Assembly (NCBI GenBank): GCA_053919585.1
Contig: CM132796.1
Length of the DNA stretch: 64,000 nucleotides
Strand: one strand, 5' to 3'
Origin: Euprymna scolopes
Taxonomy: Eukaryota
Shown: piece by piece, positions 7,550-15,600 of the stretch
Layout of the letters: each line of letters opens with the position of its first letter
Position numbering within the stretch: the first letter of the stretch is position 1
The notes under the pieces: model-generated
Database searches by the model: none
Seen by the model: the letters and a program-made list of their open reading frames with translations, nothing else
What the model was told of the DNA's origin: nothing
Position numbers and translations under genes: made by a program

Positions 7550-8772
7550 AAAATGTGTTTATTTTAAGTGAAACTTATATGATTTTTGAGAAAATACTAA
7601 TGTTTACCATAAACACAATAATGTTATTCGAAGTTGGTCGAATTATTAGACAACTGAGCACTAGAAAATAAATAAGTTAATTAATAAAAAAAATTGCTTT
7701 TTCGGTATTTAATTATTTTAATATTTAAAAAATTATTTTCTGCTACATTTACCTTTAATGTTGCTAGAAAATTCTGTTGTATTTTTGATGTTTTATCCAA
7801 TATTTTAGAATGGGGATCCTTTTATTTTATAAAGTTTACATAAAATGAGCACCCATTTATTGGCCATCACCAATTAGTAGAAACTTAATGTAAAAAAAAT
7901 ATTGGTAAACTTTTATAAGCAAACTCAGCATAGTTTACCCCATAAAAAAAGTAAAAATCTACTTTTTAGGACTATTACGTTTCAACGCATTAGAAAAAAA
8001 ATATCTGCAAAGAACTAATTAAAAAATCAGCAGGTGCAAAGTACTGGGGCTGCTGCAGTGCTGCATTGCCATTTGGTGAATGGATTGTGGACCATGGAGT
8101 AGCTTCTGGTGGGGCTTCTAGATGCCATTAGTGAGTAATTGCTATGGCTTTATCTTATGTACTACAAAAAAGGTAAAATAAAAATAAATACATTTCTTCG
8201 TTTCTTTTTCTCTCTTACTTTTCCTCTCTGCCCTGCTCTTAGCAAGTCTGTCGACCTATTCCACAAATCCCAAAACTCCATCATGAAAAGTTTCCAGAAA
8301 AAATACACAATCAAACTCATATCTCCAACTTCCAACGTAGATCCCCACTACCATGTCTCCTTCTCCAACATCTGGGGTCTATGTTCTAACTTTTCAGAAG
8401 TTGAAGCTTAATTACAAGAGACTAAACCAGACCTATGATTCCTAAGCAAAACTGGCATTGGACAGACTTTTTCTGTGGAGAAAGAAGTGGCTTACCGTTA
8501 AAGCGGCTGTGTGTTTGTGCATGCAAAGCACAAATTGAGAATCAAGATGGCACCCGCATACGTTTATGTGGAAAAAAGTCTTGCGGAATCTCGGGGAATC
8601 TCGGAGAATCTCATACCCTGATTCCATAAATAACGAGGAAAGGAAAGTGGGAGGACAGACGATCTTTAGTCACTAAAGCGAACGGACGTGTGTAAAAGAA
8701 GAGGTAGAAGAGAAGAGTGTGGTGAACGAAACAAACAATGACTCGGTTGAAAGTAGAGTTGTAACGAACACA

Positions 8773-8784
8773 AGCTATTTCGGC
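8773..8784 (+). promoter_or_regulatory. Putative atypical PBS complementary to tRNA-Phe nt 1-12
   Basis: AGCTATTTCGGC directly after the 5' LTR; identical at 37838-37849. Confidence 0.7.
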
Positions 8785-9537
8785 ATGACGTCAGGATTTG
8801 ACCCCAAGCTAATTCCCCTGTTTGATGGCAGTAGCACTGATCAGTCAGTGCAGGAATGGGTGGAAAAAGCAGAATTAATATGTCAGCTCAGTGGGGTGAA
8901 GCGTATGGAATGCGTGGTCCCAATGCACCTCACTGGGGGAGCATATGCAGTATACTAGCAGTTGGCTGATGAGAAGAAAACAGATTTTGCCTGCATCAAG
9001 CGCGCCCTTTTTACAGCATTTGCGTTAGATCCAGTTACTGCATGGAAGGAATTCATGGCCCGAAAATTACATCCCGGGGAAACGGTGGATGTATATCTGG
9101 CTGAGCTAAAAAAATTATCGGTCCTTTTTGGAGGGATGTCAGACAAAGGCTTGGTGTGCGCCTTTGTTGCAGGATTTCCTAAGAGTGTGGAAGATCTGCT
9201 CCGTGCCTCATCCCAAGTGGACGAGATAGACATATCGGAAGTATTGGTGCGGGCACGAGCAATACTAAAGAAAAGCCCTAACACTATAGACCAAGCGGCA
9301 GCTGTACAACCATCACAGGTTGGATTGCAGGACCTGGGCGAAGCTACAACCTGCTATAAGTGTAGAGGACCCAACCATTTGGCCCGTGATTGTCTTTCGT
9401 CACGTCAATCAACTCGGAAACTTGACGGGCTGCAGTGCTACAAGTGCAAAAAACGCGGACACCTGGCCCGCATTTGTCCGGGAAATGGGCAAGGGGAAGA
9501 AGCTACAGCTCCAGTCTTCTCTCCAGATCGTCATTGA
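8785..9537 (+). pseudogene. gag with two CCHC knuckles, one premature stop (8956-8958)
   Basis: CYKCRGPNHLARDC and CYKCKKRGHLARIC; ATG immediately after the PBS. Confidence 0.85.
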
Positions 9538-12500
9538 GCAGGGCGCTACCCACTGTAAGCATACACATTAATGGAAGCGAGCGCCTCGCGCTTGTGGACA
9601 CTGGGTGCACCCAGACTCTTGTAAGCAAGATATGCTGTGCCACTTGGAAAGCAGAGAGAATTCCGGTACTAACTGTAGGCGGAGGTTCACTAGCCTCTTG
9701 TGGGGTGAGCATTATCTGCGCAAGCATCAACGACGGGCCTGCAGTAGCCGTGCGAGCCCTGGTTGTGGAGGGAGAGCTTCTCAGGTACGACCTACTCCTG
9801 GGTATGGACTTGATTACACAACTGGGTGGAATTACTGTGGACAGAACTGGCAAGGTACAGTTCTCCCGATGTGAGGAACATGTTTGTGCTGCCATAACTC
9901 TCGACGAGCCTGACTTTCATGCAGAGTATGATAGAAACACCAATGCATGGATGGCGTCTTGGAAGTGGTCAAACAATCAGCCACAAATATCCTTGCGGAA
10001 CCAGTTATCGGAATATCCCCCACCTATGTGGCTAAGGGAGCAGTACGAAGAAGAACTGCAAATGTGGATCGACAATGGCTGTCTTCTTCCATACCCAGAG
10101 GATGAGCTTGGCCCCCTGTGAGGGCTGATTCCCTTGATGGCCGTCGTACAAGAGACCAAACAAAAGGTCTGCCCCATCCTAGACTACCGTGAGCTCAATG
10201 AGCATGTCAACCCATATACAGCAAAGGCTGATGTGTGTGCACTCAAATTAAGGGAGTGGCAACAGCAGGGATTGGACATGGCGACTCTGGACCTACGCAG
10301 GGCCTATCTGCAAATACGCATTGAGAAGAAATTGTGGCCATTTCAGACTGTGGAAATTGGAGGAACCCGATAGTGTCTAACCAGGCTAGGGTTCGGTCTA
10401 AATGTGGCACCAGGCATTATGGCAGCAATCATGCATGCTATCCGGCAGCAAGATGAGGCAGTGCAACAGGCAACATCCTCATATATCGATGATATATTCG
10501 TTAATGAGAGCCTCATGTCAGCACAATCCGTTAGAATGCACTTTGAGAGCTTTGGACTGACATGTAAGGAACCAGAGCATCTGTGCGATGGAACAAAAGT
10601 TCTCGGCCTGCACGTGCGCAATAGCAAGGAGGGACTTTGCTGGAGAAGAGGAAGTCATGTCCCCAAGGTCCCATCAAACATCACTCGACGAACAGTATTT
10701 TCGCTTTGTGGAAAGATGTTAGGCTATTTCCCTGTATGCGGTTGGCTCAGGGTGGCCATGGCGGCCATAAAAAGATGTGCAACAGCCGTGTCGTCGGGAT
10801 GGGATGATGCAGTACACAATGCCACCCTAAGGAGCATGCTGACAGAGACTGTGTCTAGGGTGACCAGTGATGACCCCGTTCAGTGAAAGTGGTGCGTCAG
10901 CAGGAATGAGTTCACAGTCTGGGTGGATGCTAGTTCACTGGCCCTTGGAGTTCCCCTGGCAGTTAATGATTCAATTATTGAAGATGCCTGTTGGCTTCGG
11001 CCAGAGAATGATTCGAGGCACATAAACCTGGCCGAACTTGATGCCACATTGAAGGGCGTTAACTTGGCGCTTCAATGGCAAGCCAAGGTTCTACATATCA
11101 TGACTGACTCGGCATGCACTCATCAGTAGATAACCGATGCATTAAGTGGAAGAGCATGGCTGACGACACGAGCATCGAGTGAGATGTTAATTTGAAGATG
11201 GCTTGCCACCTTGGTCGACACCATCACAGAGTACAACCTGACTGTTGACGTAATGTTGATCAGGTCTGCGCTTAACAGAGCAGATGCTCTGACAAGAGTC
11301 CCTCAACGATGGCTTCTGGCTGGTGCTCGGAGAGATTCTGATAATCTGCGAAACACATGTGCAGCAGTTGTGTGTAATGTGGATGCAGCACGCATCATGG
11401 ACATTCATCGACAGTGTGGACATCCTTGCATCAAGCGGACACTACTTTGTCAAGATGATTGATCCAGGAGTGGAAAAAAAGATATCTGAAGAGTGGTGGA
11501 AAGTTGCGAGGCCTGCCAATCCATCGACCCAGCTCCAGCACAATGGAAGAAAGGGGAGTTGGGAGTGAGTGGTAAGTGGCAGAGAGTGGGCATGGACATC
11601 ACACACTACAGTGGCAACTACTTCCTTACCCTCATCGATTGTGGGCCTACATGTTTCGCAGTCTGGAGACTCCTCGGGCGCCAGGACTCTTGCAACATTA
11701 TTCGCCAGCTGTCATCTGTGTTCTGTGAAAGAGGTGCAACCGATGAAGTGCTGACGGACAACGACCCAGCCTTTTGCAGCCATCAGATGAGGCAGTTCTT
11801 ACAAGAATGGGGTGTGCGGCTGCAGCTTAGATGCGCTTATGTGCCTTCTGGCAATGGTATAGCTGAGAGAAACCATCGCAGCATCAAAACAATTGCAGCT
11901 AGAAAGCAGTACACCATTGCAGAAGCTGTGTACTGGTATAATCTCATGCCAAAGGATTGCGTCTCTCCAGGAACGGCGCCTGCAAACGCAATCTATCAGT
12001 ACCGTGTCCGAGAAAAAGGAATCCACCCCGATACAACTGTGGCCACTGAGATAGAACGGAATCGATATGCCAAAGGGGATGCTGTCTGGGTGAAGCCACC
12101 AGGAAACCGATGTACTGACAAGTATAAACGGAGCACAGTGACCGATGTGGTGAGTCAGCAGTGTGTCCAGGTTGATGGCGTACCCCGTCACGTTAGGGAC
12201 CTACGGCCGGCGACACATATACCACCTCCAGTGGACGATGAGTGTGACTCTAAGACGAGTGGGCCATCGCTTTGGTTTGCAGCATCCCTATCAAGCAGTA
12301 ACTCTGATATCAGTAGCCTCCACGGAGATGAAGCCTTCCCCGACCATCAGGTGGTGGATGAGAGAGCATGCAAAGATGAGAGCAGCACTGTCCCCCTTCG
12401 CAGAAGTACCCGACGGCAGCGATCACCACCCCCCTGCCGTCTCTGTGATCATGAGATCAGGGGGGAGTGTGGAGAAAGAAGTGGCTTACCGTTAAAGCGG

Positions 12501-12605
12501 CTGCGCGTTTGTGCATGCAAAGCACAAATTGAGAATCAAGATGGCGCCCGCATGCGTTTATGTGGAAAAAATTCTCGGGGAATCTCGGAGAATCTCGTAC
12601 CCTGA
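9480..12605 (+). pseudogene. pol (protease, RT, RNase H, integrase) in the -1 frame, several stops
   Basis: ALVDTG, LDLRRAYLQ, SYIDD, DASS, NLAELDA, MDITH/TDND/AER; frame runs through the PPT into the 3' LTR. Confidence 0.9.
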
Positions 12606-15600
12606 TTCCATAAATAACGAGGAAAGGAAAGCGGGAGGACAGACGATTTTTAGTCACTAAAGCGAACGGACGTGTGTAAAAGAAGAGGTAGAAGAAAAGA
12701 GTGTGGTGAACGAAACAAACAACGACTTGGTTGAAAGTAGAGTTGTAACGAACACATTTTCCCTAGAGGAGTTCGTAATTAAAGGATATTCTATCTTAAC
12801 TTCCAAATCTGCCCTCGAAGATCGCCATGGGCATAAAATATGTGCCGACATTAAAGATGGCTTTCCATGTGGTGGGGACATCTCCAGAGAAGATCCTATA
12901 TGTGCTTCCGATTCGCACTTGCTCACAATACTACGTTTATATTTTTATATTTGCTCACTATTGTCCCCCCCCCCCGCAACAGGGGAGTTACTATCTTTAA
13001 AAGTATATCTGAGAAAATTTACCACGTCCTGTTTGCTAATCCTTAAGGTAAAATTCCCTTATTTGGATACTTTAATGTTCACAGTATGGAATGGTTAACC
13101 AACTCAAACAAGACCGATGATGAGGGGAGTTTCTGTCATGATTTCTCCATTGCTTATGACCTCGCTCAGATTGTTCACGAACTCACCAGTTTTGGCAAAT
13201 AGCAAACAGAATTCTGAACAGAAGTGTGTGCTCTATCCCAACCATCATCAATGGACCTGAGGTAATCTCGTCAGCATCAGAAAAAGCCAAACTTTTTGTC
13301 AAGAACTTTTAGCTAATTCTACCCTTTGCGACCAAGGTTGCCAACCCCCAATATTTCCTCCTGTATCAGAAAGCAGGCTATGTGACATACAGATATCTGT
13401 ATGTGATGTTGCCAAGCTAATCAAAAACCTGGATTCCAGTAAAGCAACCGGCCCTTGAAGCATTCTAATTATAGCGCTCAAAAAACTTCAACAAGAACTG
13501 GTACCCATACTTACAAAGCTGTTTAAACGTGGTCTTAAAGAGAATTTCTTCCCATCATTCTGGAAAATTTTATCAGTATGTCCTGTATTTAAGAATTCAG
13601 GTGGTCGGTCATATCTCTTTCAGTGCAGGCCAATAAGTCTCCTGTGCATCATGAGTAAATTGCTGGAATCTGTGTTAAATAGAGAAGTAGTCAACCATCT
13701 CAGCAAATATAACCTTAGTGACATGCAATATGGTTTCCATTCTGCTAGATCTACAGCAAATGTGCTTACAGTTATATCGCATAGTATTAGTGAATCTCTT
13801 GACAGAGGCTTCCTTTCTAGGACAATTGCTCTTGACATATCAAAGGCCTTTGATAGGGTGTGGCGTAAAGGTTTACTTCACAAGATCTCCAGCTATGGTA
13901 TAGCTGGAAATTTCTTCTTAATTATTAAATCATTTCTCTCTAATAGGTTTATAAGAGTAGCAGTTGATGGGCAGAAATCAGAAGCTCACAGTATTAATGC
14001 TGGAGTCCCTCAGGGTTCGATCCTGGGCCCAACTCTCTTCCTGATCTACATTAATAGTATTTCAAATCACATCCTTACATCATTCTACATTTATGCTGAT
14101 GACACTATCATCTATGGTAGCATATCAAAGACCGTAAACGACCAATTTCTCTCTTCTCTCTCCTCTGATCTTGAGCATGTGGTACAATGGAGAAAGAGGT
14201 GGCTGTTTTTTTTTAATGCATCTAAAACCAAGCTTCTATCTTTACATCATCAGTACTCGGATCCCCATCTGGCATCAATTAAAATAAATGGCTTCATTTT
14301 TTGACAAGCTTCTGGACTTGACCTTTACTCCTGATCTGAAATAGATCAAATCCGTTGCCGAGGTCACTGGAAAAATCGTTGGATCCTTCTATGAATCTAG
14401 TAGATATATCACTGCTGATGCAATTCTCTACCTATATAAGAGTCAGGTACGTCCAAGGATGGGGTACTGTTGCCACATCTGGGTAGGAGCTGCTAGAAAG
14501 GATTTATTCTGCCTTGATAGAGTTTAAAATAAACTTTGTAGCCTAGTAGAGGATACTGTTTTCTCTTCCCTACAACCTCTTTCTTACAGAAGAGATGTTG
14601 TGAGTTTGTCTCTGGTTTATCGTTATTTTCATGGCAAGTGCTCGTCTCAGCTCCAATCTATGGTCCCCCCTCGCCAAAACTTTCATGAGAAACACTCGTT
14701 TAGCTGAAAACACTATCAATAATTTCCCCCACTCTTTATCTGTACCTAAACCTAAACGTAGATTCCATGAACAAAGCTTCTTTCTTAGAACTGCACGCCT
14801 GTGGAACTGTCTTCCGTTTGTCTGCTTTCCAGCTGACTACAATATGGTTGTATTCAAGTCCAACATAAACAAGTTCTTGATGAGCTGTTTCACTTAAGTT
14901 AAAAAATTTACCAAATTTCCATTACTAACGATTACGATATTGTCCAATTGACTACTGTACACTCTTTAACCCTTATCCTCGAGTGGCCTCTGGGCTTTTA
15001 TAAGTGGTGATACCTATGTAAAAAAATAATATTAAGATATTAGAGAGAGGGATCACTTTCCTATATAAATTTAACATAAAATGAACACCCACTTTGTAGC
15101 CAGTTAGTGGTCAAAAAGATACGTAATCATTATGTTTCCAATTTTTGTAGCAGAGCTAGAAGGAACAGTGTCATATCCGTTTTTGATTTCTCACGTTTTT
15201 TAAGGAGGAGTAGAGCCCACGTGCTGTTAGCTATTATGTACTTTCACCTAACAATTTATTAAAAAAGATGCCATAAAAATATCGTTGTGCATAACAAAAC
15301 TTTATAAAACATGTCACCGTAACATTTATTGAGTGGGTTTTTACTAGTTTTTTGTTTCTCTTTTTTTTTGTTGAGCGATTATCGGCACTTCCCAGGTGAC
15401 CCTCTCTCATTGCAACCATTTTTTTCTTCTTGTTGTAATGAAAGTATAAATTAGTAAACAAAGATCCACCTCCCTGTATTAAAAATGGCTTTCTAAATAA
15501 TAATGTAATTAATGATGGGAGGATTTTTTTATTTGAATCATGACAAAACCTCAAATGGATAAGTAAATTAAATGCCTCCTTCCCTGAATGTAAAATTGAT

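What the first reader, a model, noticed from the sequence alone, without database searches (positions are those of the whole stretch)
8773..8784. LTR retrotransposon lineage whose PBS is complementary to the 5' end (nt 1-12) of tRNA-Phe
Seen: elements A (8474-12756) and B (37369-41278) have unrelated LTRs and diverged coding regions, yet both carry exactly AGCTATTTCGGC abutting the 5' LTR terminal CA (8773-8784 and 37838-37849). Identity stops on both sides of the 12-mer. There is no TGG, and neither LTR contains the complement, so this is neither a normal CCA-end PBS nor self-priming. Knowledge (recalled): metazoan cytosolic tRNA-Phe(GAA) begins GCCGAAATAGCTCAG, so the 12-mer is the exact complement of nt 1-12, and conservation ends at tRNA position 1. 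The priming modes I know are the tRNA 3' end, the half-tRNA-iMet of Copia/Ty5, and Tf1 self-priming, where the first 11 nt of the RNA are cleaved off. Inference: this lineage primes with a 12-nt 5' tRNA-Phe fragment, perhaps released by a Tf1-like cleavage acting in trans. I know of no description of this mode but cannot search the literature.
Basis: partly seen in the sequence, partly recalled or inferred. Interest (0 to 1): 0.95.

Follow-up and report, generated by a model that had tools for sequence, protein, structure and literature searches.

The report
Retroelement primer site matching tRNA-Phe start
A family of retrovirus-like jumping genes, very abundant in this mollusc genome and also found in barnacles, sea spiders, whipworms and Hydra, has at the place where DNA copying must start a 12-base site that pairs with the first 12 bases of a transfer RNA rather than with its tail, which points to a way of starting reverse transcription that I could not find described.

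Summary
AGCTATTTCGGC follows the terminal CA of the 5' LTR in elements A and B. Their LTRs are unrelated and their pol genes are about 46-55% identical.

The host tRNA-Phe(GAA) gene (about 757 copies) begins GCCGAAATAGCT, so the site is an exact complement of nt 1-12.

Genome-wide, CA plus the 12-mer occurs 5,481 times (control 1), in at least 15 different flanking contexts. Identity stops on both sides of the 12-mer.

Relatives were found by integrase similarity alone. Seven elements from at least six other hosts carry, at the same place, AGCTA + 4 variable bases + GGC. Three variants complement 5' ends of tRNA-Phe genes seen in environmental DNA. The Hydra site complements a flatworm tRNA-Lys(UUU) 5' end.

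No LTR holds the complement of its own site, so Tf1-type self-priming is excluded. There is no TGG site.

Heritable variation is confined to the two positions opposite tRNA A5 and A6. In family A the canonical and variant sites occur 56:42 and are interspersed on the tree. This fits copying of a canonical primer, though two near-identical masters are not excluded.

The priming itself, the cut after U12 and its nuclease are inferred. No description was found in the searchable literature. Two earlier notes of this scan reached the same reading on other windows of this genome.

The parts
8469..8473 (+). Target-site duplication TTTTC, left copy (element A)
   Evidence: The same 5 bases follow the 3' LTR at 12757-12761. 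RNA-library contigs join about 8467 to about 12758 without the element, which are copies of the surrounding repeat lacking this insertion.
8474..8772 (+). Element A 5' LTR (299 bp, TG..CA)
   Evidence: Direct repeat with 12468-12756, 94-97% identical. Holds no complement of the primer site with up to 3 mismatches.
8773..8784 (+). Element A primer-binding site AGCTATTTCGGC, complement of tRNA-Phe nt 1-12
   Evidence: It is the only stretch of the element of 10 or more bases complementary to the host tRNA-Phe.
8785..9534 (+). Element A gag, with two CCHC zinc knuckles and one in-frame stop at 8956-8958
   Evidence: The ATG follows the primer site directly. zf-CCHC E 1.5e-11. Frame pieces listed.
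9426..12467 (+). Element A pol, broken into several frames: protease, reverse transcriptase (YIDD motif), DUF7047, RNase H, integrase
   Evidence: Pfam hits gag-asp_proteas, DUF7047, RVT_3 (weak, E 0.021) and rve. Frame pieces. Other copies of the family keep open pol frames of more than 1,000 aa with the same domain order.
12459..12467 (+). Element A polypurine tract AGGGGGGAG
   Evidence: Lies directly before the 3' LTR. The same GGGGGAG-type tract precedes the 3' LTR in the Trichinella, Trichuris and Amphibalanus relatives.
12468..12756 (+). Element A 3' LTR
12757..12761 (+). Target-site duplication TTTTC, right copy (element A)
37369..37837 (+). Element B 5' LTR (469 bp, TG..CA), unrelated to the LTR of A
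37838..37849 (+). Element B primer-binding site AGCTATTTCGGC
37850..41159 (+). Element B internal region: degraded gag-pol of the same lineage
   Evidence: tblastn with a family-A pol frame gives colinear pieces that are 27-55% identical. Weak DUF7047 and Integrase_H2C2 hits.
41160..41172 (+). Element B G-run in the polypurine-tract position
41171..41281 (+). Element B 3' LTR, truncated after about 110 bp
   Evidence: 90% identical to 37397-37479. The sequence beyond is unrelated.

Best explanation
The 12-mer is the minus-strand primer-binding site of a retrovirus-like LTR-retrotransposon lineage. The lineage has gag with CCHC knuckles, then protease, a divergent RT, DUF7047, an RVT_3-type RNase H and an integrase.

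Shown:
- The site pairs perfectly with nt 1-12 of the host cytosolic tRNA-Phe(GAA). That is the 5' strand of the acceptor stem, U8, A9 and the first three bases of the D stem.
- It abuts the last base of U5.

Inferred:
- The zinc-knuckle Gag anneals the genomic RNA to the tRNA 5' end, displacing the tRNA's own acceptor and D-stem partners.
- A cut between U12 and C13 gives a 3'-OH opposite the first base of the site.
- RT extends this 12-nt RNA into U5 and R.
- Later, plus-strand strong-stop DNA copies the primer back to its 5' terminal G1 and runs off. This fixes the length of the site at exactly 12 nt and re-imposes the tRNA sequence at each cycle.

Who makes the cut is open. It could be the element's RNase H acting on the RNA/RNA duplex, as in Tf1 but in trans (my guess, about 60% of this reading). 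Or a host nuclease could supply a ready-made 5' fragment (about 40%).
For: 1. Position and match. The site is directly after the LTR's CA in A and B and matches the host tRNA-Phe gene 12 of 12.

2. Abundance. CA plus the 12-mer occurs 5,481 times against a control of 1. In a sample of 100 sites I counted 83 preceded by CA and 11 by TA, in at least 15 different flank contexts, with no identity outside the 12 bases.

3. Lineage-wide trait. Relatives were fetched by integrase similarity alone. At the same place they have:
- AGCTATTTCGGC in Aplysia and Amphibalanus;
- AGCTATCGCGGC in Trichinella;
- AGCTATCGAGGC in Trichuris and in one ENA sample of unknown organism;
- AGCTATCACGGC in Pycnogonum;
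- AGCTAACCGGGC in Hydra;
- AGCTATTCCGGC in another ENA sample of unknown organism.

4. The variable bases are those opposite tRNA nt 4-7. Environmental genes beginning GCCGCGA, GCCGTGA or GCCTCGA followed by TAGCTCAGTTGGGAGAGC were called tRNA-Phe(GAA) in 69 of 73 ARAGORN calls, though the search pattern itself demanded the Phe-type D arm. GCCCGGUUAGCU is the 5' end of Schistosoma japonicum tRNA-Lys(UUU) (PMC3653858).

5. Drosophila tRNA-Phe has the same 5' 25-mer as this host (PMC7038984).

6. None of the eight LTRs tested holds the complement of its own site with up to 3 mismatches. No other conserved complementarity to tRNA-Phe was found.

7. Footprint of function. Counts in the own genome, against 5,481 canonical sites:
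- T>C at site position 4: 22;
- transitions at positions 5 and 6 together: 119;
- T>C at position 7: 505;
- T>C at position 8: 690.

8. Family A has canonical and position-8 variant sites at 56:42. No tRNA gene matches the variant. The two states are interspersed on a star-like tree, need at least 4 changes and occur together in subclades with 90-96 support. A canonical primer copied onto variant templates would give this.

9. The 12-bp RNA duplex is predicted at -18.7 kcal/mol.
Against: - No biochemical evidence exists: no strong-stop DNA, no 12-nt RNA and no cleavage assay.
- The tRNA sets of Trichinella, Trichuris, Pycnogonum, Hydra, Aplysia and Amphibalanus could not be read with these tools. 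Cross-species covariation therefore rests on tRNA-Phe variants that exist somewhere, not on each host's own gene.
- I could verify the pol lineage only for A, B and the relatives from other hosts.
- A 12-nt primer cut inside the D stem has no known precedent.
- The abundant site variants put a C opposite tRNA A5 or A6. They are a mismatch to the only tRNA-Phe found and are not yet explained.
- The 56:42 mix in family A could also come from two nearly identical master copies with recombination.
Confidence: 0.68

Rival explanations
1. The site binds intact tRNA-Phe through nt 1-12, but no cut is made. DNA synthesis starts from an internal 2'-OH (retron-like branch priming), or the bound tRNA only serves packaging or placement while another 3' end primes.
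For: The sequence data show only pairing, not a cut. Retron reverse transcriptases prime from a 2'-OH (my own knowledge).
Against: No LTR element is known to do this. The LTR boundary lies exactly at the base opposite U12, which is what a 3'-OH at U12 predicts. No second conserved site or complementarity was found near U5.
Confidence: 0.04
2. The primer is not tRNA-derived. Some other host or element RNA ends in the complement of the site, and the likeness to the tRNA-Phe 5' end is coincidental or comes from a tRNA-derived repeat.
For: Only the 12 bases are conserved, and short primers could come from many RNAs. The genome holds many tRNA-Phe copies, which could seed derived transcripts.
Against: The match ends exactly at tRNA position 1. 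The site changes between host taxa at acceptor-stem positions, and the changed forms are again 5' ends of real tRNA-Phe or tRNA-Lys genes. In the own-genome sample the 12-mer contexts are LTR ends, and no other repeat class appears.
Confidence: 0.05
3. Tf1/sushi-type self-priming: the 5' end of the element's own transcript folds back on the site and is cut.
For: The site length (12 nt, against 11 in Tf1) and its direct contact with U5 resemble Tf1 and Tj1 (PMC4600332).
Against: None of the eight LTRs, from seven hosts, contains the complement of its own site with up to 3 mismatches. In the window the complement is absent on both strands.
Confidence: 0.01
4. The 12-mer is conserved for another reason, such as a regulatory, translation or host small-RNA target site beside the gag start. 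Priming would then use an unrecognised site elsewhere.
For: In family A, gag's ATG follows the site directly, so the site lies in a translation-initiation context.
Against: In other families and hosts the distance to the ATG and the bases after the site differ. An element has no reason to keep a target for host silencing. No canonical TGG site or other tRNA complementarity exists in the elements. The boundary of an LTR is by definition set by the primer's 3' end.
Confidence: 0.04

Closest known systems
Drosophila copia / yeast Ty5 'half-tRNA' priming
   Same: The primer is a 5' part of a host tRNA whose new 3' end is made by an internal cut. The binding site is not complementary to the CCA end (PMC5371799; details from my own knowledge).
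   Different: In copia and Ty5 the tRNA is initiator tRNA-Met. The site pairs with the anticodon-stem region and the primer is about 39 nt. Here the tRNA is tRNA-Phe (probably tRNA-Lys in Hydra). The site pairs with the extreme 5' end, nt 1-12, and the cut would fall in the D stem. The pol order is also different: integrase is last here and comes before RT in copia.
Tf1 / Tf2 / Tj1 / sushi self-priming
   Same: A short site (11 against 12 nt) lies directly after U5. The primer is a 5'-terminal RNA segment that has to be cut off at the end of an RNA/RNA duplex. In Tf1 the cut needs the element's RNase H (PMC4600332).
   Different: In Tf1 the primer is the element's own transcript and the complement lies in the LTR. 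Here the complement is absent from all LTRs tested, and the partner is a host tRNA acting in trans.
Canonical retroviral and Ty3/gypsy tRNA 3'-end priming
   Same: A host tRNA is used. The site lies next to U5. The primer is copied during plus-strand strong-stop synthesis, so the site is renewed from the tRNA.
   Different: The canonical site is 8-18 nt beginning TGG and pairs with the CCA end, and no cut is needed. Here there is no TGG, and pairing is with the opposite end of the tRNA.
Odin retrotransposons and lokiretroviruses (PMC9040795)
   Same: Retrovirus-like LTR elements of invertebrates without env and with an added RNase H. Here the integrase profile hits retroviral integrases best (MMTV E 7e-14, PFV 3.6e-5, against Ty3 1.7e-3), and the RNase H is of the RVT_3 type.
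   Different: Odin was reported only from sea anemones, at 1-6 copies per genome, and that paper does not mention primer sites. No phylogeny was made here, so kinship is open.

Membership tests
LTR retrotransposon with Ty3/gypsy-retrovirus gene order | Direct LTRs with TG..CA ends, a short target duplication and a polypurine tract before the 3' LTR | tested here: met
   Element A. Relatives.
LTR retrotransposon with Ty3/gypsy-retrovirus gene order | gag with zinc knuckles, then PR-RT-RNase H-IN in that order | tested here: met
   Pfam hits on A and on open frames of other copies.
Canonical tRNA 3'-end primer site | A site starting TGG, complementary to the 3' CCA end of a tRNA, within a few bases of U5 | tested here: not met
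   No TGG site follows the LTR in A, B or the seven relatives. The only complementarity to tRNA-Phe of 10 or more bases is to nt 1-12.
Tf1/sushi self-priming elements | Complement of the site present at the start of the transcript inside the LTR | tested here: not met
   No match with up to 3 mismatches in any of eight LTRs.
copia/Ty5 half-tRNA priming | Site complementary to the anticodon-stem region of initiator tRNA-Met; Ty1/copia gene order (IN before RT) | tested here: not met
   The site complements tRNA-Phe nt 1-12. Integrase is C-terminal.
BEL/Pao | Pao-type protease and gag domains (Peptidase_A17, DUF1758, DUF1759) and DUF5641 after the integrase | tested here: not met
   None of these Pfam families hit the pol frames. 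The DUF1759 genes in L007 and L046 lie outside the elements.
Troyka | CG..CG termini and 3-bp target duplications (PMC12440569) | tested here: not met
   TG..CA ends and a 5-bp duplication.
Odin retrotransposons | RT, RNase H and IN branching as sister to lokiretroviruses; tether plus added RNase H | tested here: inconclusive
   An RVT_3-type RNase H lies after DUF7047, and the integrase is nearest to retroviral integrases. The RT gave only a faint match to foamy-virus PR-RT (E 0.16). No reference sequences were available for a tree.

The most novel reading that the evidence does not exclude
A metazoan-wide, retrovirus-like LTR lineage (molluscs, crustaceans, sea spiders, trichinellid nematodes, cnidarians) starts reverse transcription from the 5'-terminal 12 nucleotides of a host tRNA, mostly tRNA-Phe, cut between U12 and C13. 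This would be a fourth priming mode, beside the tRNA 3' end, the half-tRNA of copia and self-priming. Standard LTR annotation tools compare primer sites with tRNA 3' ends only and would miss it. The site polymorphism opposite A5 and A6 would then be a genomic record of primer copying, or of a modified or edited primer.
Probability: 0.55. Interest if true: 0.9.

Novelty: new variant of a known kind. Interest (0 to 1): 0.85.

Why it matters
How reverse transcription is primed is a defining trait of retroelement groups, and only a few modes are known.

- A site for the opposite end of a tRNA would add a mode that needs a cut inside the tRNA D stem. That implies a new substrate for a retroelement RNase H, or a use for very short 5' tRNA fragments.
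- It would explain why thousands of LTR elements in invertebrate genomes seem to lack a primer site to programs that test tRNA 3' ends only.
- It would give a simple 12-base marker for annotating this lineage.
- It bears on host defence. The 3' tRNA fragments known to block canonical primer sites would not touch these elements.
- The lineage's integrase is nearer to retroviral than to Ty3 integrases, so the trait is also relevant to how retroviral priming evolved.

Tried and rejected
- Self-priming: rejected.
- A tRNA-Lys-type site in the own genome: CA+AGCTANCCGGGC occurs 3 times against 5 for the control, so there is no such family here.
- A tRNA gene matching the variant site: GCCGGAATAGCTCAGTTGG gave 0 hits and GCCGGAATAGCTCA gave 5, which is background.
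- Extra complementarity between the element RNA and tRNA-Phe (bipartite site as in Ty1 and Ty3): only chance 8-9-mers.
- Reading the tRNA genes of other hosts: not possible. The genome search refuses those loci, and no tRNA lies in the fetched flanks.
- Loci without a usable result: T. murrelli (L046) showed no LTR pair around the integrase. Portunus (L168) lies in satellite DNA and has no site of the expected form. P0017 is not on record.
- Classification by solved structures and the protein atlas gave only generic RT neighbours.
- RNA-library contigs cover the whole element, including the U5-site-gag junction. They cannot show transcript starts or primers, and DNA carry-over is not excluded.
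- Literature: ten full-text searches found no description of a primer site for a tRNA 5' end. They included the site's sequence itself. The Odin and Troyka papers do not mention primer sites.

Full report
**1. The observation**

AGCTATTTCGGC occurs twice in the window, at 8773-8784 and 37838-37849. No other match appears on either strand with up to one mismatch, and none of 100 shuffles reached two matches.

Element A is a complete LTR element:
- LTRs at 8474-8772 and 12468-12756, 94-97% identical, with TG..CA ends;
- a TTTTC target duplication and a polypurine tract AGGGGGGAG before the 3' LTR;
- gag with two CCHC knuckles, protease, an RT with YIDD, DUF7047, RNase H and integrase, all broken by stops and frameshifts.

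Element B has a 469-bp 5' LTR (37369-37837) and a truncated 3' LTR.

In both elements the 12-mer begins at the base after the terminal CA. The LTRs are unrelated. The pol regions are colinear but only about 46-55% identical in most pieces. So these are two families of one lineage that share nothing around the site except the site itself.

**2. The tRNA**

The window's genome is 5.9 Gb, with chromosome-sized contigs numbered to at least 46. Runs holding the element are labelled mollusc. I infer a decapodiform cephalopod, but this was not checked.

The genome holds about 757 copies of the 25-mer GCCGAAATAGCTCAGTTGGGAGAGC, mostly in tandem arrays. ARAGORN calls the gene in L001 tRNA-Phe(GAA), and its first 12 bases are the exact complement of the site. 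Drosophila tRNA-Phe has the same 5' 25-mer (probe sequence in PMC7038984). Within elements A and B and the Aplysia and Amphibalanus relatives, nothing else of 10 or more bases is complementary to this tRNA.

**3. Abundance and sharp borders**

The 12-mer occurs 9,280 times in the genome, against about 99 for the reversed control. With the CA prefix it occurs 5,481 times against 1.

I took a sample of 100 sites with 12 bases of upstream and 11 bases of downstream flank. By my count:
- 83 were preceded by CA, 11 by TA and 6 by something else;
- at least 15 different flank contexts appeared;
- identity stopped on both sides of the 12 bases.

The strand excess of the 12-mer equals the number of tRNA genes. 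That leaves roughly 8,500 non-tRNA sites.

**4. The trait belongs to the lineage, not to this genome**

A search with A's integrase found relatives at 40-60% identity in Pycnogonum, Trichinella, Trichuris, Amphibalanus, Hydra, Portunus, Aplysia and unnamed assemblies. I fetched the DNA around ten of them. This choice was blind to the primer site. I then located their LTRs by self-comparison.

Seven loci had an LTR or LTR junction that I could read. All seven have a 12-base site of the form AGCTA-NNNN-GGC directly after the LTR's CA:

| Host | Locus | Site |
|---|---|---|
| Aplysia | L043 | AGCTATTTCGGC |
| Amphibalanus | L044 | AGCTATTTCGGC |
| Trichinella sp. T8 | L007 | AGCTATCGCGGC |
| Trichuris suis | L045 | AGCTATCGAGGC |
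| ENA sample, organism unknown | L169 | AGCTATCGAGGC |
| Pycnogonum | L047 | AGCTATCACGGC |
| Hydra | L008 | AGCTAACCGGGC |
| ENA sample, organism unknown | L170 | AGCTATTCCGGC |

In L170 the repeat found by self-comparison runs on past the site, because the 3' LTR is followed by a second site and gag start.

Read as complements, all are GCC-NNNN-TAGCT. Positions 1-3 and 8-12 of the tRNA stay constant, and the middle of the acceptor stem varies. That is where tRNA isoacceptors differ between taxa.

I could not read those hosts' tRNA genes. Indirect checks gave the following:
- A scan of metagenome contigs for GCC[G/T][C/T]GA followed by the Phe-type D arm found genes starting GCCGCGA, GCCGTGA and GCCTCGA. 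ARAGORN called 69 of 73 of them tRNA-Phe(GAA).
- GCCCGGUUAGCU is the 5' end of Schistosoma japonicum tRNA-Lys(UUU). That species' tRNA-Phe starts GCCGGAG, which shows that the Phe acceptor stem does vary among animals (PMC3653858).

These results show that each variant site complements the 5' end of a real tRNA. They do not yet show that it is the local host's tRNA.

**5. Rivals at sequence level**

- None of eight LTRs contains the complement of its own site with up to three mismatches, so Tf1- or Tj1-type self-priming (PMC4600332) is out.
- No TGG site is present.
- A tRNA-Lys-type site is not enriched in this genome.

**6. A footprint of function in the variants**

Because copies are young, post-insertion decay of the site is low. 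T>C at site position 4 occurs 22 times, and transitions at positions 5 and 6 together occur 119 times, against 5,481 canonical sites.

Two variants stand out:
- T>C at position 8 (AGCTATTCCGGC) occurs 690 times.
- T>C at position 7 (AGCTATCTCGGC) occurs 505 times.

These positions lie opposite tRNA A5 and A6. The variants are therefore inherited by active lineages, while the part of the site nearest the presumed primer 3' end is kept intact.

The position-8 variant is common in some families, including family A and at least three other flank contexts, and rare in others. No tRNA gene beginning GCCGGAATAGCTCA exists in the assembly.

In family A, the first 100 of 387 sites with family-specific flanks split into 56 canonical, 42 variant and 2 other. 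I built a tree from 2.5 kb of pol-integrase sequence of 33 copies. It is a star-like burst with median end branches of 0.015. The 7 copies known to be canonical and the 5 known to be variant are interspersed:
- at least 4 changes of state are needed;
- clustering is no better than in shuffles (99 of 500 shuffles were as low);
- three subclades with 90-96 SH-aLRT support hold both states.

From retroviral work (my own knowledge), this pattern is what follows when a template with an altered site is primed by the normal tRNA. The minus strand carries the template's version and the plus strand carries the primer's version. The mismatch is then resolved about 1:1. The pattern thus fits a canonical tRNA-Phe-derived primer that is copied.

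It does not prove this. Two near-identical master copies plus recombination would look similar. Why C opposite A5 or A6 recurs in several families is unexplained. Possible causes are a tolerated mismatch (predicted duplex -14 to -15 against -18.7 kcal/mol), descent from hosts whose tRNA-Phe has G there, or a primer base read as G.

**7. What the lineage is**

Open pol frames of other copies give protease, a weak RVT_1 hit, DUF7047, Integrase_H2C2 and rve. Relatives also carry an RVT_3-type RNase H.

A profile of the C-terminal half hits retroviral integrases best: MMTV 7e-14, PFV 3.6e-5, RSV and HTLV about 1e-4, and Ty3 1.7e-3. The RT gives only a faint match to foamy-virus PR-RT.

It is not BEL/Pao, not copia and not Troyka. 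Whether it is kin to Odin (PMC9040795) is open.

**8. Expression**

Contigs from oligo-dT and poly-A RNA libraries cover the whole of family A, including the U5-site-gag junction. This is compatible with full-length transcripts, but DNA carry-over cannot be excluded, and contigs show neither starts nor primers.

**9. Mechanism**

Shown: the position, the perfect pairing with tRNA-Phe nt 1-12, the sharp 12-nt borders, the spread across the lineage, the absence of alternatives, and variation confined to the distal middle of the duplex.

Inferred:
- annealing with help from the zinc-knuckle Gag;
- a cut between U12 and C13;
- extension from U12;
- plus-strand copying of the 12-nt primer to G1, which explains why conservation ends at tRNA position 1.

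The nuclease is unknown. It may be the element's RNase H acting as in Tf1 but in trans, or a host enzyme.

**10. Novelty**

Known modes are the tRNA 3' end, bipartite sites in Ty1 and Ty3, the copia half-tRNA and Tf1 self-priming (PMC5371799). Ten full-text searches, including the site's sequence, found no report of a site for a tRNA 5' end. Subscription journals and Repbase reports are not covered.

Two earlier notes of this scan, s1-244830 and s1-241393, reached the same reading on other windows of this genome. They are not independent evidence.
- the site variants in Trichinella, Pycnogonum and Hydra, and their match to real tRNA 5' ends;
- the position-specific variant counts;
- the 56:42 split in family A and its tree.

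I rate it a new variant of a known kind: priming by a tRNA fragment.

Noticed in passing
own genome, G000:C28:101.70-101.72 Mb and C18:100.1-105.5 Mb (L001-L006): tRNA-Phe(GAA) genes number about 757 and sit largely in long tandem arrays, with 219-bp spacing on C28. This is an unusually large family for one isoacceptor.
   Followed up: partly
own genome, sites listed: Variation of the primer site is concentrated at the two positions opposite tRNA A5 and A6: 690 and 505 copies, against 22 at position 4. It recurs in several unrelated families, yet no tRNA gene matches either variant tested.
   Followed up: partly
window 8400-12800: The window copy of family A differs from RNA-library contigs mostly by having A or T where the contigs have G or C (about 45 A>G and 42 T>C out of some 120 differences). 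It has the longest end branch in the family tree (0.036 against a median of 0.015). It is an older, G>A/C>T-decayed copy.
   Followed up: partly
window 8467 / 12758: Contigs in several runs join the left flank to the right flank without the element. The DNA around A is itself a repeat, and copies of it exist without this insertion.
   Followed up: no
window 37843-37856; own-genome family with flanks ATTTTTGTTTCA..CCGAATATGGC: In element B and in the commonest own-genome family, the bases right after the site (CCGAA..) form an imperfect palindrome with the 3' half of the site (..TTCGG). It looks like a weak mimic of the tRNA 5' end. Other families lack it.
   Followed up: no
L007:4207-7604: The Trichinella element carries an internal tandem duplication of about 1.8 kb of its gag-pol region, with the two copies 93% identical.
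   Followed up: no
L170:4906-5269 and 9629-9984: In this unnamed assembly the 3' LTR is followed again by a primer site and the start of gag. These are tandem elements sharing one LTR.
   Followed up: no
L168 (Portunus trituberculatus): The integrase gene lies inside a dense array of satellite-like repeats of about 95-190 bp. No LTR or primer site could be found.
   Followed up: no
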